Shown here piece by piece: positions 52,714-60,227 of a stretch of 64,000 bases of DNA. The notes beneath the pieces were generated by a model. That model worked only from the letters and a program-made list of their open reading frames with translations, did not search any database and was not told the DNA's origin. How positions within the stretch are numbered: the first letter of the stretch is position 1; every line of letters begins with the position of its first letter. The translations under genes were made by a program, and so were the position numbers. Source of the stretch: Vitrella brassicaformis CCMP3155 (Eukaryota; Protista; Chromerida); NCBI GenBank assembly GCA_001179505.1, contig CDMY01000267.1:62001-126000 (forward strand). Direction: 5' to 3'.

Positions 52714-53403
52714 CTACCCAGAGAGAGGCCGAGGGTCTGTTCCATCCTGTGGATTGATTGGACCATAGTCAGATTTCGATCCGTTCGTTCATGGCTGATG
52801 TCCTCTGTCGGACACACGATGCGCAAAAACACCTAAGTAATCTAATGCGATCGTGGTGTACGTGGCTTGACGAGCAGAGAGAGAGAGAGAGAGGCGCAAA
52901 AGAGCCACAACAATAGTGGCAAGCCACACTAGAGGTCATGCAGGTGCCTTCGCACCACGCCACACCACTTTCTGTCCTCCGGTCGCCAAGCTGCCTTTGC
53001 TGAGCTCAGCCCCCTCCCACACAGACACCTCGAACACACCTCAGTCTTTCGGCTTTGAAGGCCTTGCATGCCCCACACCCACCCTCACACCCTCACTGTC
53101 TCCCTCCACCCCGCCATCCACCTGTGGATGGGACGGGATGGACGGATCACGCACACACAAAGAGTGTTGGGCTGACCCTACAGTAGTAAGTATACCAATT
53201 GATGAGTGGCATGAATCGCCTGTCTGTCTGTCTGTCTGTGTGCCTCTGCATGTGGGTGGGTCTAGAGCTAGGGAAAGTGCTTCCTCTCGTTGCGGAGCGA
53301 CCTGATTGGGCAACCAACCAGAGACAAGGAAGAAGACGATCTTGTCTCGCCTGCACCCCTGTGCTCCTCCCCCCCTCCCTCCCTCCCTCCCCCCTTCAGT
53401 TGC

Positions 53404-56400
53404 CTACCTGTCTCTCCGCTGTCTGACTTCGAGTGCGAGTTTCCACCTCTGGGCCTGGTCCTCGTCGCCATGAGCCAGGTAGATCAGATCCTCACGGTAT
53501 CTGCACACACACACACACACACGGACACACGGACACAGAGTCCATGCTGGCAGGGCACACTGCTGTCTGTCTGTCTGTCTGTCCATGTGTGTAGCCATTA
53601 CCTGCAGTCGGACGGCAGGACGTCCGTCCCCCCGACGGGCGTCAGAGTGGCCGGCTCAAAGTCATACAAACTCCAATAGCTGCACACGCACACATGAGCA
53701 CCCACACACGATGCATGCGCTGTGCTGTGTGTCTCTCCCCATCCCCATACGACTCACACCACAGCGCACCCCGCCCACCCACCTTTTGCCGTCGAAGTGC
53801 AGCCCCTCCAGCCAGGAGCCCGTCACGCTCACCACACTCTTGCCATCCTTCTTGATGCTGCCACGCAGCGTGTCCACAGGCGTCCTCGGCAGCCCAAACA
53901 GCGGCCGACCGTCAGGCGCCAGCACCAGAGTGCAGGTGAGCCCGTTAGCCCGGTCCTCAAACCGCAGTCGGTCGACCCACTCGAAGGTGCGCGCCCCCCA
54001 TATGAGCCCGCTGAGCTTGGCTGCCGGCATGGTGTACTCGACGCGCCCGCCGTCATGGAACTCGACGACGAGCGGCCCCTCCTGTCTGCCGACCGCGGCG
54101 TTGCCCTTGAGCTGGCCCTTAAACTCGTAGAAGCCCCAGAAGCGGAAGAGCCCGTCTGGCCCGTCGGCTTGGAAGTGAGAGATCGGTGGGTGGTGTGAGG
54201 TGTGCTCCATGAAGAGGTGCGAGCCGTCGCACCAGGCGGCCTGGAAAGTCTCGCCGAGGATGGGGTTGAAGGGCTTCAGTTGGCTGCACGCTGCAGCCAT
54301 AACACAGGGGGAAGGAGAGAGGCAAATATGTGTGGTGGGTAGGTGGGCGCTCTCTCCCTCCCTCTCTCTCCCTCTCTCTCTTCCTCTGTGTCTCTTCCCT
54401 CACCTCTGTGCAGCCCCGCGACGCAAAAACTGATGACGTATTTGAGTCGTTCCAGCGCCTGATTGGGCCCTGGCGGCACCATGGCAGCCTTGCGCAGAAA
54501 GGTGGGCCCGAAGCTCCACTGGTCGCTTATCCGCTCCAGCCCCGACCGTGGCTCGAAGACCCTGACGGGCAGTGAGATGCTGACGATGTTCTTGCCCTCG
54601 AGCAGGGCCTGGCCGGCCGACTTGATGAGGTCCAGGATGACGCCCTTCTGCTTCTCCATCTGGGAGGCGTCGATGCACCTGAGCCCACCCTCGGGCAGAC
54701 GCACCAGGCCGTGCAGCGGCCACTCGCGGCGAGATGGACTACTGATGTGACATGAAGGGACGGAAGAATGTGAGATGAAATGCAGGCAGCGGCCGTCGTG
54801 TGCTGTTTGCTCACCTGTCGTTGCGTGGGTGCAGGTTGCTGCGTCTTGCTGACCCGCGCGTGCCCCCCGATGCAGAGGAGGCCTCCCCGCTGCGACTCCC
54901 ACTGCCGTTGCCGCTGGCACTTGCGGCGGTGAGTGGCGAGGGGCACAGCCCGTCAGTCGACGTGGTGGTCGCACCCGCATGAGCACTGCCGCTCCTGCTG
55001 CACACAGCCGCCGTGCCCTCCTCCCACACCTCACCGACTCTCTGCATACGCAGACAGATCAATGAAGGAAACGCGCAGCACAGAGATGGCGTGATCCCTC
55101 TCTCTCTGCTGTGCGTCAGTCAGCCACTCACCTGTTGCTTGCCGATCGTGCCGTTGATGGCGTTGTGATCGTGTTCGTGCTGCGGGGGAATGCCCGGGGC
55201 CACCAGAGTCAGATACCTAAGCTGTCCGATCGCCCGTGCCCTGGTCAGCAGACAGGCCTCCTCCCCCCAGTCGGGCACCCACCCACCGAAGGACACGCTG
55301 CCTACATACGTCAAGCGGCACGCACTCGCACCCCCACCGCCCCCNNNNNNNNNNNNNNNNNNNNNNNNNNNNNNNNNNNNNNNNNNNNNNNNNNNNNNNN
55401 NNNNNNNNNNNNNNNNNNNNNNNNNNNNNNNNNNNNNNNNNNNNNNNNNNNNNNNNNNNNNNNNNNNNNNNNNNNNNNNNNNNNNNNNNNNNNNNNNNNN
55501 NNNNNNNNNNNNNNNNNNNNNNNNNNNNNNNNNNNNNNNNNNNNNNNNNNNNNNNNNNNNNNNNNNNNNNNNNNNNNNNNNNNNNNNNNNNNNNNNNNNN
55601 NNNNNNNNNNNNNNNNNNNNNNNNNNNNNNNNNNNNNNNNNNNNCCTCCCCCTCCCCCTCCAGTGACAGGCCGTGCCGCCCACAGCTCATAACCCTCCGC
55701 CTTGATGGCCTTGGCGGCCTCCAGCGGAGCGATCGGCACATCGTCGGACGCCCCCACCAGAGTCGACTCGCCCGACAGGCCAGCAGTGTTGCCCCGTGCA
55801 GGCCAGCCGCCCACCCATTCTGCCACCGATGGCTGGCCGCCGCCATTGCCCCTCCCGAGCCAGTCGAGCCACGCTGTGCGCCTCTGTGGTTGCGGCGGCA
55901 TGGAGGGGGCGGCAACCTGCCCGTGACGAGTGTTCCTCCGGCTGCGTGCTCGTGCCGCCTGTGCAGCGACCGTCGCGTTGAGTAGGCGTCTCTCCGCGTC
56001 GTCGCTCGTCTGCAATAGGATGAAGTAGGATCCGTCAGCCAAAGACCACCAGTACCTTCGCCGACACAGCCGACGCAGCCCCAGGCCGACGTGATTGCCG
56101 CCAGGGAGTGCCGCCGAGGACAGCACGGGCCGGAAGGTCTCGTATATGACATCGTTGTGCGCGTCGATGGTCTCGATGCGCTCGCTCTGCAGGTGCCCCG
56201 GGAGCCACTCACGTGTCCGCTGCAGGTCCATCAGCAGGCTGAAGACATCTAGAGGGGGCGAGAAGACCATGCAGGTGGCCTGCACCAGACGCGCATCGGG
56301 AGGCAGCCGGGCAGCCCCTGCGCGTGGGCTGGACGACTCCCATCGCTCGGCGTAGCTGTACTGGCGCGGCCCTGGGTGCCGGTAGCGGATGAACAGAGTC

Positions 56401-59300
56401 AGACAGAACACGCTGAGCAGGACGGCCAATGCGCCGTGCCACGATGGGCTGGTCACCATGCTCTCGAAAACCCAGGCGAGAAAGCCGTCCGGTGCGCACA
56501 GGCTCGACAGAAAGGGGAGGATCAGCACCACCAGACACAGCCAGCCCAGCAGCCGCACGCAAGGCCCCCCGGCCATGCCTCTGCCATGACGCCGCGCCCC
56601 CCCGAAGACCCTCCACGTGTGGAGATCTGCGACCGACAGCCTCAGCCCCTGGTCGGCCTCGACGAGCGTCCCCTTGGCGTCCATTCTCTTGGCAGCCTTG
56701 CAGACCTCGTGCAGCGCCTCCTCGATGCCGTCAGACAGCTGGCCCACACTGGCGTTGGCACTCTTGCGCCACCACCATGGGTCACGATCACGGCTGTGGG
56801 TGGGTGGTGGCTGGCTCGGCAGAGGGAACCAGGGGGGGGATGCTGGCGCTGACATGTCCGACGAGGGGGAAAGGTCGTTCATCATGCCCTCATCGGAGGC
56901 CAGGGGGACCACCGGCAGCCGAGAAGGCACTGCTGCTGCTGCTGCTGCGGGTGGTGGTGGTGGTGCTGCTGCTGCTGCCGGTGGCGGTGGTCCTGGTATG
57001 GCCGCTGCGGTGTCCGGCATGTGTGGAGTGCCCTCCAGCCCCGGCCTGGCCCAGCTGGCGGGCAGGGCCAAGGACAGCGGCCCGCTGCTGCCGCTGCCGC
57101 TGCTGCTGATGATGTTGGCGGCTGAGGCCCACCTGTCCTGCCTGGGGGGGCCCGCTGTGGCCGTGGCAGACGCACCCGCGTGTGAGAGGGGGGCGGCTCT
57201 GTGTGTCTGTGTCTTGTGCTGCTCATTAGGAGGTCTGCGTAGTGACGTTGGGCTGGATGGAAATGGTGATGGGGAGGGGACCTGTGTGGGCGGCGCCGTG
57301 ACGGCTGAAGGGGCGTAGGCGGGGAGGGAGGAGGCCGCCGTGGCCGCCCGCTGCATCCAACCCATCCACTGCTTGGTCGCCTCCACTGTCGACGCACTGC
57401 AGTCAGTGAGAGGGGTGACAAGGGAGGGAAGGAACCACACAATACAATCAATCCAATGTGTCCGTCCTCTGTCCTTCACAGAGGGCGACATGCATACGCT
57501 ACGCACCTGAAGTGGAGGGTGCGCTTCCAGCCGGCCGATGACGTGACTGTCACGGCGAAGGCATGTGCCCTGCCGCTGACCTCCCCCGCCCATGTGACCT
57601 CGGCCCCCCTGAGAGGCACCCGCCCCCTGGGGACACTGTCCCTGGCGTCGCCGTAGTAGAACATGGCCGCGCCCCCCACACGCACCGTCACGTACCGACG
57701 GTGCCACGAGTAGCTTATCGGACCCTCACCTGCAAAGTCACACACACACATACACCCATACACACACAGAGGGCGCAATTGCAAGACGGAGAGGCCAGCA
57801 CCCTGTCTCTCTCTCTCTCTGTCACCGAGTTTGAAGAGGTATCCGCATTTCGGTCGTCTGGTGGTGGCTGTGAGGGGTGGTGCGGCCCCTGCACCACCTG
57901 GCAGGGCGCGATGGGATGACGGTGTGTGTAGGGCGGTGGCCGGGTGGAGCGGCGGCTTGGGGGTCCCCACACGCGACGATGACCGGCGGAGACTCAGGCG
58001 AGATGACGAACGCCGATACTAACAGACACAGGCAGATAGACACTGGGGTGTGGGAGCGTCTGTTCTCTGTTGTTCTGCCCTGTCCGGTGGTGGCTGACTT
58101 GACCTCTTCTAGTCGAAGAGACGGTGACCTGCCCAGCCGCCCACCTGCACCCATACACGCACAACACACACACCACTGTCGGCTTCCCTGTCTGTCTGTC
58201 TGTCTGTCTGTCCATCGGTGTCGTCTCAGCGTACGGTCTGTTCCGGTGGGTGATGCAGCTGCCTTGGGTGAGCGTCGCCTCCTGGATGATGGCGAGCCCA
58301 TCCCAAGGCCACCCTCGATGCCCACGACCTCCACCTCGCCGTCCTCGTCCTCTTGTGGCTCGGGGGTGGTCGGGTTGGCCTCCACGTTGTCGGAGTCCTC
58401 GTCAGAGGTGCGCTCCTTGGCCCACGCCTGCACCCAGCACACCACACACAAGAGAGCAGGGCAGTGAGGCCCCTCTCTCTCTCTCTGTGTGTGTGTGTGC
58501 AGAGTACCCTGTCGAGCTTGGCTTTGACTTGCGCCTCGAGGGCTCGGATGTCCTCCAGCCGCATGCCGTGCCACTCATCCTGAACACACACGACAGGCAG
58601 GTGTGTGCAGTCAGCCATCGATATACACAGACGGACTGTACTAGAGGTGGTCTGTCAGCCTTTCTCTCTCTCTCACCATCCAGCAGATGGCCTTCCGGTG
58701 GTACTTGAGCAGCGCGTTGCGCAGCAGCTTCTGCGTCAAATCCTCGATCTGACAAACAGACAGACAGACATAGACGCATGAGTTGTCTTGTTTTGGTTGA
58801 GCATTATCGTTGGTTGGGTGGGTGTGCGGGCGGTTGGCTTGCGTGCCTTGTTCTGGAACCCCAGGAGTGGGAAGTCGACGGCGATGACCTTGTAGCAGGT
58901 CATGACGGGGTCTGCCCGCGACATCCACTCCTTCGACATGGGCGAAAAACCTATACACACATGACAATGACACGCACACACGACACGGACGTCAGTGCGT
59001 GTGTGCGTTGGCGCGTATTGTGACCGATATCCCTCACTCACTGACTGACTCACCGGCCTTTTGTGATGAGAAGAGGGCGGGGTCTTCGTCTTCCCGGTAC
59101 TCATCCGGCGGGATGGGATCGTTGACGATGTCTATCACATCAACCTGGGTGGGTGCAGACAGACAGACAGCCATATGGATGGATGGATGGATGACATCTG
59201 TCCTGTCGTGGTGTCTTGTGTCTACTCGGGCGCACCTGTCTGACTCTGAGAGTCTTCTCCGGCAGGTCTAGAGGCTGAACACACCGCAGCCATAACCACA

Positions 59301-59335
<35 letters not shown>

Positions 59336-60227
59336 GGTGACGATCGAAACACTCCGGTGCTGCTTGTGGAGGTGGTGCTGGTCCTGGGAGGCGACCAGGT
59401 AACGCCCGTCACGTACGTTGTCGTGTGTGCACACTCCCGGGTGGTGCATGCTCTCCACAACCAGAGTCAGCCGAGGAAACAGCGGACACTGACACACACA
59501 CACACACAAGTGTCGATCCACAGCCATAGATCTGTGGGTGAGGGCTGCCTGTCTGTCTGTCTGTCTGTCTGCCTACCGAGTATTCCGTCTTGCACATTGG
59601 GAAAGCGTTCCATGCCTTCTCCTCGAACACCTGCACGACATCGCATACAGCATCAGGCAGGCGGGCAGGACACACATGAGGAGACCAAACACACAAGACG
59701 GGACGGGTTCGTGTCGACTCAGCGCCCACCAGCCACTTTGGGTTCGCCAAAGACAGCACCCACTTGGGCAAATGACTGCAACCATTCACACACACACAAC
59801 AGACAGACAGACAGACAGACAGAGAGGGGGGGGAGGGGCAAAAACAATACAACACAACACAATTTGCAGGCGGGCAGGCAGGCAGGCTGACTGACTGACT
59901 GAGTGAGTAGCTCATCTAACAAGAGCTGGCCTGGTCACGTGACCGTGCGCACCTCACCCTGCGATGGAGATGCGTTTGTGCGTGAATTGTCCGTCCCATG
60001 TGCCGTCTTTGAAGGGCTCGTTGGTGACAATCTCCACACCGTCGCCGCCAGCCGTGTCCTCCAAACTCGACTTGGCCACCATGTACAGCTGCGCTATCTG
60101 GTACTGCTGCAACCACAACCACACACACACACGTCAGCCGAAATGACCGACACGAGAGAGCAGAGGCCATTTGCTCGCTCACCTCGAGTGACAGAGGCAT
60201 CACCAGGCGGTATTCAACGGTCTTCAT
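53404..60227 (-). CDS. Multidomain lipid-transfer protein: PITP - PH - 2 TM - START - OSBP-related domain
   Basis: PITP: MKTVEYRLVMPLSLE|QYQIAQLYMVAK, GQFTHK, EEKAWNAFPMCKTEY, MTCYKV, YHRKAICW..DEWHGM. PH: KCGYLFKL..WHRRYV..QWMGWM. START: PPLDVFSLLMD..IDAHNDVIY..RRYW..DGSYFIL..CRLTYVGSVSFGGWVP. ORD: SISLPVRVFEPRS, KPFNPILGETF, EHTSHHPP, GSWLE, LPSDCR|YREDL. All introns I checked between domains keep the frame. Confidence 0.85.
55345..55644. other. Assembly gap (300 N) inside the START-domain exon, flanked by C/G runs
   Basis: A run of n characters; the flanks encode poly-Gly on the minus strand. Confidence 0.99.

What the first reader, a model, noticed from the sequence alone, without database searches (positions are those of the whole stretch)
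53404..60227. One membrane-anchored polypeptide carrying three different lipid-transfer modules (PITP + START + ORD) plus a PH domain
Seen: the minus-strand exons splice in frame from a PITP domain (from 60227) through a PH domain (~57480-57850), two hydrophobic helices (LLGWLCLVVLILPFLSSL; ALAVLLSVFCLTLFI, ~56390-56560) and a START domain (across the N gap) to a complete OSBP-related domain ending at 53404. I found no stop between modules. Established: PITP, START and ORD are three unrelated lipid-shuttling folds, usually on separate proteins. Residues equivalent to the PITP inositol-binding set (T59/K61 in FTHK, E86/N90 in EKAWN, K195 in CYKV) and the ORD PI4P-binding signature (KPFNP, EHTSHHPP) are all intact. 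Inference: this could be a single ER-anchored contact-site machine that couples PI delivery, PI4P counter-exchange and sterol/phospholipid transfer. I do not know this full PITP-PH-TM-START-ORD order from model organisms; related partial fusions may exist in apicomplexans.
Basis: partly seen in the sequence, partly recalled or inferred. Interest (0 to 1): 0.85.

Follow-up and report, generated by a model that had tools for sequence, protein, structure and literature searches.

The report
Membrane-anchored PITP–PH–START–ORD lipid-transfer gene
This is a real, expressed gene of the alga Vitrella brassicaformis that joins three lipid-carrying domains (PITP, START, ORD), a PH domain and a membrane hairpin in one protein. 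It is the free-living counterpart of a known but little-studied Toxoplasma/Plasmodium protein, and its START domain had gone unnoticed.

Summary
On the minus strand, 22 exons (60227..53268) encode PITP, PH, a two-helix hydrophobic hairpin, a START domain and an ORD. Spliced RNA contigs confirm 10 of the 20 introns exactly. They link PITP to PH to TM/START-N, and START-C to ORD.

Only the N gap (55345-55644) is unbridged. It falls in a Gly-rich loop between two consecutive START strands that are contiguous in relatives, so a gene boundary there is very unlikely.

Pfam misses the START domain. It is supported by sequence matches to Pfam-positive START domains, and by AlphaFold models whose top 50 PDB matches are nearly all START domains. 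The hairpin is inserted inside START, between β2 and β3.

The novelty is overstated:
- The window is Vitrella brassicaformis CCMP3155, and the gene is already modelled publicly (1516 aa, spliced artificially over the gap).
- Orthologues are described as Toxoplasma TGME49_289570 (PITP-PH-OSBP) and Plasmodium PfPITP (ER, TM).
- PH-START-ORD is the oomycete ORP1 type, the oxathiapiprolin target.
- PITP and START are not unrelated folds.

What seems new is the START domain in the alveolate proteins and their link to ORP1. An ER contact-site function is inferred, not shown.

The parts
53268..60227 (-). Whole coding region: 15 exons before the gap (1048 aa) and 7 after it (496 aa), plus an unknown number of residues in the gap
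   Evidence: Exon model. Identical to public protein P0023 apart from the gap flanks. Introns confirmed by spliced RNA contigs.
58523..60227 (-). PITP domain (IP_trans), residues 1-243, spread over 10 exons
   Evidence: E 2.5e-89. Human PITPalpha 1uw5 at E 4.1e-51, with the inositol-binding residues kept.
58749..58846 (-). GC-AG intron inside the PITP domain
   Evidence: Donor GC seen. Joint 58748/58847 (CT..GC on the + strand) in RNA contigs of two runs.
57348..57850 (-). PH domain, residues 383-481, split by two introns
   Evidence: E 9.2e-13. Joint 57396/57507 confirmed.
56628..56726 (-). START domain N-terminal elements (helix α1, strands β1-β2), residues 689-721
   Evidence: AlphaFold model of P0023:660-1110. 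Conserved with P0001.
56496..56555 (-). Hydrophobic helix 1 of the hairpin, residues 746-765
   Evidence: Kyte-Doolittle peak 2.45. Modelled as helix 742-764. Hydrophobic segments at the same place in most alveolate relatives.
56385..56438 (-). Hydrophobic helix 2 of the hairpin, residues 785-802
   Evidence: Kyte-Doolittle peak 1.94. Modelled as helix 785-803.
55647..56294 (-). START core from β3 to β8, with a disordered insert of about 75 aa, residues 833-1048. Ends in a Gly run at the gap edge.
   Evidence: phmmer hits to Pfam-positive START domains. Language-model features. Fold.
55345..55644 (.). Assembly gap (N run of estimated length). It falls in the loop of the β8-β9 hairpin of START.
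   Evidence: Alignment to P0001. G-rich flanks. DNA and RNA contigs run into it from both sides and none is listed as bridging.
55201..55344 (-). START C-terminal part (Gly run, β9, C-terminal helix α4)
   Evidence: Joined to the ORD exons in single RNA contigs.
54690..55200 (-). Ser/Gly/Ala-rich linker between START and ORD
   Evidence: Joints 55041/55132 and 54741/54815 confirmed.
53271..54689 (-). OSBP-related domain (short form), with KPFNP at 54276-54262, EHTSHHPP at 54207-54184 and K..LE..QR at 53442-53416
   Evidence: (E 1.9e-43). Joints 54290/54404 and 53679/53783 confirmed.
53268..53270 (-). Stop codon TAG, at the end of a last 34-nt exon (53301-53268)
   Evidence: P0023 ends the same way. 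An RNA contig leaves the genome at the predicted donor (its piece ends at 53406).

Best explanation
This is one expressed gene of Vitrella brassicaformis. It encodes a protein of at least 1544 residues with this layout: PITP, linker, PH, a Pro/Ala-rich linker, a START domain with a two-helix hydrophobic hairpin inserted between β2 and β3, a linker, and a short ORD.

It is the chromerid orthologue of the apicomplexan multidomain PITP (Toxoplasma TGME49_289570, Plasmodium PfPITP). Its PH-START-ORD part shares ancestry with oomycete ORP1.

Shown here: the exon structure, transcription, the identity of the domains, conservation of the PI- and PI4P-binding residues, and the family relationship.

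Inferred from characterised relatives:
- The hairpin anchors the protein in the ER with all domains facing the cytosol.
- The PH domain reaches a PI4P-bearing partner membrane.
- PITP delivers PI for PI4P synthesis.
- The ORD returns PI4P in exchange for a second lipid (PS in PsORP1).
- START carries or senses a further lipid.
For: - Gene structure: an in-frame model with canonical introns. It matches public protein P0023 at 1-1036 and 1037-1516.
- Transcription: spliced RNA contigs confirm 10 introns. They chain the later PITP exons and linker to PH, then PH to TM/START-N, and START-C to linker to ORD.
- Domains: Pfam PITP, PH and ORD.
- START by sequence: the TM+START-N piece hits EDR2-type proteins exactly on their Pfam START domains, at E 2.7e-7 to 2.9e-4 in 1.84 billion proteins.
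- START by fold: the AlphaFold models of Vitrella 660-1110 and of relative P0001 show START topology. Nearly all of their top 50 PDB matches are START domains (STARD10, CERT, STARD13, STARD4, MLN64), best E 7.7e-9 and 5.9e-10.
- Gap: its two flanks align to consecutive strands of one START domain in P0001.
- Same order of domains in Selenidium. Digyalum (PH-START-ORD) and Toxoplasma (START-ORD) fragments are consistent with it, and Eimeria carries PITP, PH and ORD by precomputed Pfam.
- Phylogeny: the ORDs of the alveolate fusion form a clade (94/97). That clade sits inside a 99/97 clade with oomycete ORP1 and the other START-linked ORDs, apart from animal and fungal ORPs.
- Key residues are kept.
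- Literature on relatives: PMC13036008, PMC10408353, PMC10543664, PMC13538951.
Against: - No read or contig listed bridges the gap, so one continuous reading frame is inferred, not seen. RNA and DNA contig ends running into the gap disagree with each other.
- Pfam's START model does not reach threshold.
- The Vitrella model has a mean pLDDT of only 67. It was made from the public protein, which lacks part of the β8-β9 hairpin.
- The PITP membrane-insertion pair WW203/204 is LL here.
- The hydrophobic segments lie in a different START loop in oomycete ORP1 and apparently in Toxoplasma. Membrane anchoring may therefore not be conserved in detail.
- No localisation, topology or lipid-transfer data exist for Vitrella.
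- The ORD tree has only the outgroups that the searches happened to return.
Confidence: 0.8

Rival explanations
1. Two separate genes meet in the gap. An upstream gene would encode PITP-PH-TM plus the first part of START, and a downstream gene the last START strands plus the ORD. Alternatively, the scaffold wrongly joins two loci at the N run.
For: No listed contig bridges 55345-55644. The RNA contigs stop at 55669 and 55344, and the contig ends running into the gap differ between RNA and DNA runs. The frame across an N run of estimated length cannot be checked.
Against: This would cut one START domain between two adjacent strands. The flanks align to contiguous sequence in P0001. The same order of START and ORD occurs uninterrupted in Selenidium, Cardiosporidium, Digyalum, Toxoplasma and oomycete proteins. 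Both flanks are open reading frames right up to the Ns and end in the same Gly-rich low complexity, which explains the assembly break.
Confidence: 0.04
2. The START-like region is a degenerate relic. It would serve only as a scaffold for the membrane hairpin or as a regulatory module and not carry lipid, so the protein would have two working lipid-transfer domains rather than three.
For: Pfam START is not detected in any alveolate member. Large disordered inserts interrupt the domain in Vitrella and even more so in Toxoplasma. A hairpin inserted in the fold could restrict lid movements. In PsORP1, targeting was unaffected by ORD loss and was attributed to the PH, START and TM parts (PMC13538951).
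Against: The core strands and helices are conserved from chromerids to gregarines and coccidia. They are modelled with pLDDT 84-93, which argues for selection on the fold. The inserts sit in loops, as is common in functional domains.
Confidence: 0.25
3. The hydrophobic helices do not span the membrane. They would be an amphipathic or re-entrant membrane-dipping element, or a buried part of the fold, and the protein would be peripheral, recruited by its PH domain and other contacts.
For: The position and strength of the hydrophobic segments vary across the family. Toxoplasma P0028 has none between β2 and β3 at Kyte-Doolittle 1.3 or above, and the oomycete segments are Ala/Gly-rich and weak, 1.7-2.0. 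Only a hydropathy scan was run, not a dedicated predictor.
Against: The Vitrella segments are 18-20 residues long, strongly hydrophobic (peaks 2.45 and 1.94) and modelled as long helices outside the START core. PfPITP is at the ER and the authors attribute this to TM domains (PMC13036008). Vitrella has no FFAT-like motif to supply ER binding otherwise.
Confidence: 0.15

Closest known systems
Apicomplexan multidomain PITP: Toxoplasma gondii TGME49_289570 and Plasmodium falciparum PfPITP (PF3D7_1351000)
   Same: N-terminal PITPalpha-type domain, PH domain and C-terminal ORD on one large protein (PMC10543664, PMC8266687). PfPITP localises to the ER, probably via TM domains (PMC13036008). The Vitrella ORD groups with those of Toxoplasma and Eimeria (94/97).
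   Different: The papers I could read describe only PITP, PH, TM and ORD. One paper counts PF3D7_1351000 among the 'START proteins', as a putative STARD2 orthologue, without saying which part is meant (PMC5104948). Here a START domain is shown between PH and ORD. A profile built without coccidia also finds it, heavily interrupted, in a Toxoplasma partial protein (59 bits). That Toxoplasma protein lacks the hairpin between β2 and β3. Vitrella is free-living and photosynthetic.
Oomycete ORP1 (PsORP1/PcORP1), target of the oomycide oxathiapiprolin
   Same: PH, then START associated with two hydrophobic segments, then a short C-terminal ORD. No FFAT motif. Located at ER-Golgi contact sites and exchanges PS for PI4P (PMC13538951). 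These proteins are the next-best database relatives (E about 1e-72 to 1e-87, against 1e-9 for animal ORPs). Their ORDs fall in the same 99/97 clade.
   Different: ORP1 has no PITP domain. Its hydrophobic segments lie in the loop before the conserved PRDL strand, not between β2 and β3. Its START passes Pfam's threshold and the alveolate ones do not. The paper calls this START exclusive to oomycete ORP1, which the present data contradict.
EDR2-type PH-START-EDR2_C proteins
   Same: These carry the START domains closest in sequence to the Vitrella one (E 2.7e-7 to 2.9e-4). They also place a PH domain before START.
   Different: They end in an EDR2_C (DUF1336) domain instead of an ORD, and they have no PITP domain.
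Animal multidomain PITPs (PITPNM/Nir2/RdgBalpha) and the OSBP + PITPbeta + Sac1 cycle
   Same: A PITP domain working at ER contact sites to feed PI4P synthesis, which an ORP then consumes (PMC8266687). This is the logic the fusion would combine in one chain.
   Different: In animals these are separate proteins tethered through FFAT and VAP. PITPNM carries DDHD and LNS2 domains, not PH, START or ORD.

Membership tests
PITP, class I/II (Pfam IP_trans PF02121) | Full-length match to the family profile above the gathering score | tested here: met
   299.5 bits against a cutoff of 21.3, profile 1-245 of 246 on residues 1-243. Collinear exon hits.
PITP, class I/II (Pfam IP_trans PF02121) | Inositol-headgroup residues T59, K61, E86, N90 and K195 (PITPalpha numbering) | tested here: met
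   Alignment to human PITPalpha 1uw5: QFTHK, EEKAWN and CYKV are conserved.
PITP, class I/II (Pfam IP_trans PF02121) | WW203/204 membrane-insertion pair | tested here: not met
   Aligned residues are LL (PLLGF, 58870-58856). They are still hydrophobic.
PITP, class I/II (Pfam IP_trans PF02121) | PI/PC transfer activity | not testable with these tools
   Needs a biochemical assay.
START domain (Pfam PF01852) | Match to the Pfam profile above the gathering score | tested here: not met
   No hit at E<=1 on the window pieces and none at E<=0.01 on P0023.
START domain (Pfam PF01852) | Significant sequence similarity to accepted START domains | tested here: met
   phmmer E 2.7e-7 to 2.9e-4 in 1.84 billion proteins. 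The matches lie on the Pfam START segments of P0006-P0009. Language-model neighbours are START clusters.
START domain (Pfam PF01852) | Helix-grip α/β fold: α1, β1-β3, α2-α3, β4-β9, α4 | tested here: met
   AlphaFold models. Foldseek top 50 are nearly all START domains, best E 7.7e-9, probability 1.00.
START domain (Pfam PF01852) | Uninterrupted domain in this genome | tested here: inconclusive
   The N gap sits in the β8-β9 loop. Both strands are present on the flanks but no contig is listed as bridging.
ORP/OSBP (Pfam Oxysterol_BP PF01237) | Profile match and the EQVSHHPP-type signature | tested here: met
   149.2 bits against a cutoff of 28.9. EHTSHHPP at 54207-54184.
ORP/OSBP (Pfam Oxysterol_BP PF01237) | PI4P-contacting residues: K/N of KPFNP, the HH pair, and the C-terminal K..E..R | tested here: met
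   Alignment to the ORP1 and ORP2 structures 5zm5 and 5zm8.
Apicomplexan multidomain PITP (TGME49_289570 / PfPITP type) | PITP at the N terminus, PH in the middle and ORD at the C terminus of one protein | tested here: met
   subject to the gap.
Apicomplexan multidomain PITP (TGME49_289570 / PfPITP type) | ORD monophyletic with the coccidian members | tested here: met
   A clade of Vitrella, Digyalum, Selenidium, Cardiosporidium, P0001, Toxoplasma and Eimeria, support 94/97. The Eimeria branch is long.
Apicomplexan multidomain PITP (TGME49_289570 / PfPITP type) | ER localisation | not testable with these tools
   Known only for PfPITP and, by hyperLOPIT, for the Toxoplasma protein (PMC13036008, PMC10408353).
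Oomycete ORP1 type (PH-START-ORD) | PH, then START, then ORD, with no FFAT motif | tested here: met
   Domain order. No FFAT-like match to a relaxed pattern (a regex only, not a scored FFAT search).
Oomycete ORP1 type (PH-START-ORD) | Two hydrophobic segments inside the START domain | tested here: inconclusive
   Present, but in the β2-β3 loop in Vitrella and in the loop before the PRDL strand in oomycetes.
Oomycete ORP1 type (PH-START-ORD) | No further lipid-transfer domain at the N terminus | tested here: not met
   Vitrella carries a complete PITP domain upstream. It is therefore a relative of ORP1, not a member.

The most novel reading that the evidence does not exclude
The alveolate 'PITP-PH-OSBP' proteins, including the likely essential Toxoplasma protein and ER-resident Plasmodium PfPITP, would all carry a working third lipid-transfer domain: a START domain tethered to the ER from within its own fold by a hairpin in the β2-β3 loop. 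Together with oomycete ORP1 they would descend from an ancient PH-START-ORD contact-site protein of the SAR lineage, to which myzozoans added PITP. That would make a self-contained PI / PI4P / second-lipid exchange cycle on one chain. It would also mean that the START domain proposed as an oomycete-specific fungicide target has parasite counterparts.
Probability: 0.35. Interest if true: 0.65.

Novelty: new member of a known kind. Interest (0 to 1): 0.45.

Why it matters
The gene shows that a protein family already flagged as likely essential in Toxoplasma and ER-resident in Plasmodium has a free-living, photosynthetic orthologue. It also shows that the family carries an overlooked START domain. 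That makes it, as far as I can find, the only described chain with PITP, START and ORD together.

It links two separate literatures, the apicomplexan multidomain PITP and oomycete ORP1 (a commercial oomycide target). It contradicts the recent statement that a START domain in an ORP is exclusive to oomycetes.

It also corrects the public Vitrella gene model, which removes two START strands by splicing over an assembly gap.

The function remains inferred. The value is in annotation and in pointing experiments at the START domain and the hairpin, not in a new mechanism.

Tried and rejected
- Pfam on the long exon and on the post-gap exon gave no START hit. phmmer against PDB sequences with the START-N piece gave only chance hits to allophycocyanin. 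Sequence-to-profile methods alone would therefore have rejected START.
- The word-indexed search with the whole Vitrella protein returned only five proteins, because low-complexity words filled the candidate list. The search with the Selenidium relative was far more useful.
- The window's own protein was not among the representative-library hits.
- I tried to close the gap from public runs. Contig ends enter the gap from both sides and read open in frame: Gly-rich in DNA run X3, different letters in RNA runs X6 and X7. They disagree with each other, only 30 letters are shown, and none is listed as bridging. I did not use them as evidence of frame.
- A relaxed FFAT pattern found nothing.
- The START profile built without coccidia gave no hit on Eimeria P0064, so START is not shown for that protein.
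- Considered and rejected: a scaffold chimera or two genes (see rivals), and the START-like region being a second PITP-like domain (all top fold and sequence matches are START proper).
- Literature searches for Vitrella plus oxysterol-binding found nothing. PMC7611342 could not be read.
Full report
**What is in the sequence**

The region is eukaryotic, about 58% G+C, with short introns full of CAGA/GTCT microsatellites.

I built a minus-strand exon model by hand:
- Fifteen exons run from the ATG at 60227 to the edge of the N run at 55645. They give an uninterrupted 1048-residue reading frame. All introns are GT-AG except one GC-AG donor at 58846.
- Seven exons run from 55344 to a TAG at 53270-53268 and give 496 residues in a single frame.

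**Identity of the locus**

A database search returned a public protein, P0023: 'unnamed protein product [Vitrella brassicaformis CCMP3155]', listed in UniRef as 'PH domain-containing protein', 1516 aa.
- It is 100% identical to my model over residues 1-1036, and over the last 480 residues.
- The only difference is that the public model treats the gap and its flanks as an intron. This deletes 12 residues before the Ns and 16 after them.
- The window is therefore Vitrella, a free-living photosynthetic relative of apicomplexans, and the gene is already in public databases as one gene.

**Transcription**

Logan contigs of three runs (X6, X7, X1) are spliced, so they are RNA. A fourth run (X3) is unspliced DNA.

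The RNA contigs reproduce ten of my introns to the base:
- 53679/53783
- 54290/54404
- 54741/54815
- 55041/55132
- 57396/57507
- 58018/58104
- 58144/58235
- 58579/58677
- 58748/58847 (the GC-AG intron)
- 58950/59054

The contigs chain the modules as follows:
- One contig family carries exon 58233-58426. The joints from 58950/59054 down to 58018/58104 chain the later PITP exons through the linker to the first PH exon.
- A 2146-nt contig joins the PH exons to the long exon down to 55669.
- A 3.9-kb contig joins the first post-gap exon (55344-55132) through the linker to the ORD exons.

No transcript end lies between PITP and PH, or between START and ORD. Contigs cannot show transcript levels or ends, so this is evidence of presence and splicing only.

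**The gap, tested first**

The N run is an estimate, so frame cannot be compared across it. No listed contig bridges it. Contig ends from both DNA and RNA runs extend into it from both sides, but they disagree with each other. I do not rely on them.

The indirect evidence for continuity is strong:
- Both flanks are open to the last base and both end in Gly-rich, G-rich low complexity. That explains why assemblies break there.
- The closest relative with an intact region is P0001, an intron-poor ORF on a metagenome contig. The Vitrella flanks align to consecutive strands of P0001 (FVITS and CVIYLASL), separated there by only about five residues.
- Toxoplasma has a 45-residue insert in the same loop.

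The gap therefore hides a loop insertion of unknown length inside one domain, not a gene boundary.

**The domains**

- PITP: 299.5 bits, covering the whole Pfam profile. Human PITPalpha scores E 4.1e-51, with the inositol-binding T, K, E, N and K conserved. The WW membrane-insertion pair is LL.
- PH: E 9.2e-13.
- ORD: E 1.9e-43. KPFNP, EHTSHHPP and the C-terminal K..LE..QR are present. About 85 residues of the C-terminal subdomain seen in the ORP1 and ORP2 structures are missing, as they also are in oomycete ORP1.
- Two hydrophobic stretches, residues 746-765 and 785-802.
- No FFAT-like motif.

**Is there a START domain?**

Pfam says no, and so does a plain search of PDB sequences. Three independent lines say yes.

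1. An exhaustive phmmer search of 1.84 billion representatives with the TM+START-N piece found nine proteins. Four are PH-START-EDR2_C proteins, matched exactly on their Pfam START segments (E 2.7e-7 to 2.9e-4). Five are alveolate relatives with the same region next to an ORD or a PITP+PH.
2. Protein-language-model neighbours are START clusters.
3. Structure prediction:
   - P0001:170-640 has a mean pLDDT of 71.8 with the core above 90. Vitrella P0023:660-1110 has a mean pLDDT of 67 with the core at 84-93.
   - Both show the START order α1, β1-β2, β3, α2-α3, β4-β7, β8-β9, α4.
   - In both, nearly all of the top 50 Foldseek PDB matches are START domains: STARD10, CERT, STARD13, STARD4, MLN64, StAR and PCTP, with probability 1.00.

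The models also show that the hydrophobic hairpin is an insertion between β2 and β3 of START. A hairpin returns the chain to the same side of the membrane. That is what a domain split by it requires.

**The family**

The same region, with hydrophobic segments upstream of β3, occurs in several alveolates:
- Selenidium pygospionis, as PITP-PH-X-ORD
- S. serpulae
- Cardiosporidium cionae
- Digyalum oweni

Eimeria flavescens has a 1970-aa PITP-PH-ORD protein.

A profile built without coccidian sequences finds START pieces in a Toxoplasma partial protein (KFG42568.1): β3-α2, α3-β5, β6-β7 and β8-β9-α4, separated by long inserts, 59 bits in total. That protein has no hairpin between β2 and β3. It does have an Ala-rich hydrophobic stretch in the loop where oomycete ORP1 has its predicted TM segments.

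The next relatives are oomycete PH-START-ORD proteins, at E about 1e-72 to 1e-87 against 1e-9 for animal ORPs.

An ORD tree gives this picture:
- The seven alveolate sequences form one clade (94/97).
- That clade sits inside a 99/97 clade with oomycete ORP1, a ciliate ORD, an ACBP-PH-START-ORD protein and other PH-START-ORD proteins.
- This larger clade is separate from animal and fungal ORP3, ORP8 and Ank-ORPs.
- The outgroup sampling is limited to what the searches returned, and the Eimeria branch is long.

**What is already known**

- Toxoplasma TGME49_289570 is described as PITP + PH + OSBP, nearly 2000 aa, likely essential and unstudied (PMC10543664, PMC8266687, PMC13472501). It is assigned to the ER (PMC10408353).
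- Plasmodium PfPITP (PF3D7_1351000) has PITP, PH, TM domains and a remote ORD. It localises to the ER (PMC13036008). An older paper lists it among the 'START proteins' without detail (PMC5104948).
- Oomycete PsORP1 is PH-START-ORD with two predicted TM segments in START and no FFAT motif. It acts at ER-Golgi contact sites, exchanges PS for PI4P, and is blocked by oxathiapiprolin. Its authors state that the START domain is exclusive to oomycete ORP1 (PMC13538951).
- I found no paper that describes a START domain between PH and ORD in the alveolate proteins, or that links them to ORP1. My literature access is partial.

**How it most likely works**

This part is inferred. The hairpin would anchor the protein in the ER with every domain cytosolic. 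Long disordered linkers (about 130, 200 and 115 residues) would give reach. The PH domain would bind a PI4P-rich partner membrane. PITP would carry PI from the ER to feed PI 4-kinase. The ORD would bring PI4P back in exchange for PS or another lipid. START would move or sense a third lipid, or help targeting.

Only the architecture, the conserved ligand-binding residues and the behaviour of relatives support this. Nothing was measured in Vitrella.

**Verdict**

The gene is a new, already catalogued member of a known family. The useful additions are a previously unrecognised START domain, the position of the membrane hairpin inside it, the link to oomycete ORP1, and a correction of the public gene model.

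Noticed in passing
window 55645-55680 and 55297-55344: The public Vitrella gene model (P0023) bridges the assembly gap with an artificial intron. This drops 12 residues before the gap and 16 after it, which are parts of two START strands. That may contribute to automatic annotation missing the domain.
   Followed up: yes
window 58749-58846: A GC-AG intron inside the PITP domain, confirmed by spliced contigs in two RNA runs. All other introns of the gene are GT-AG.
   Followed up: yes
window 53560-53590, 58190-58215, 59555-59580, 59790-59830 and others: Most introns carry (CAGA)n / (GTCT)n tetranucleotide runs. The read-laying tool skipped several of them as repeats, and contigs appear cut there.
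   Followed up: no
window 55343-55345 and 55644-55646 (gap edges): Contig ends that run into the gap differ between the DNA run (Gly-rich, G-rich) and the RNA runs (other letters). Both read open in the flanking frames. This could reflect unitig collisions in low complexity or something spliced inside the gap. It is unexplained.
   Followed up: partly
L001 6-326 and 711-3509: The metagenome contig that encodes the closest relative (P0001) has a PH exon upstream, with an intron after the conserved 'LHF' at the same position as in Vitrella. The rest (TM, START, most of the ORD) is one intron-free ORF. The contig ends before any PITP exon could be seen.
   Followed up: partly
P0025 (EukProt transcript GILK01005639, organism not identified here): A protein with ACBP + PH + START + ORD. 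It is another chain with three lipid-binding modules, and its ORD falls in the same 99/97 clade.
   Followed up: partly
P0005 (Selenidium serpulae, 901 aa): The hydrophobic segments and the START piece occur twice with identical sequence (36-120 / 564-648 and 147-261 / 675-789). This is probably a transcript-assembly duplication rather than biology.
   Followed up: no
P0028 407-435; P0033 474-519; P0034 350-394: Toxoplasma and oomycete proteins have an Ala/Gly-rich hydrophobic insert in the START loop before the conserved PR(D)L strand. This is a different site from the Vitrella hairpin, so the membrane-contacting element seems to have moved within the domain during evolution.
   Followed up: partly
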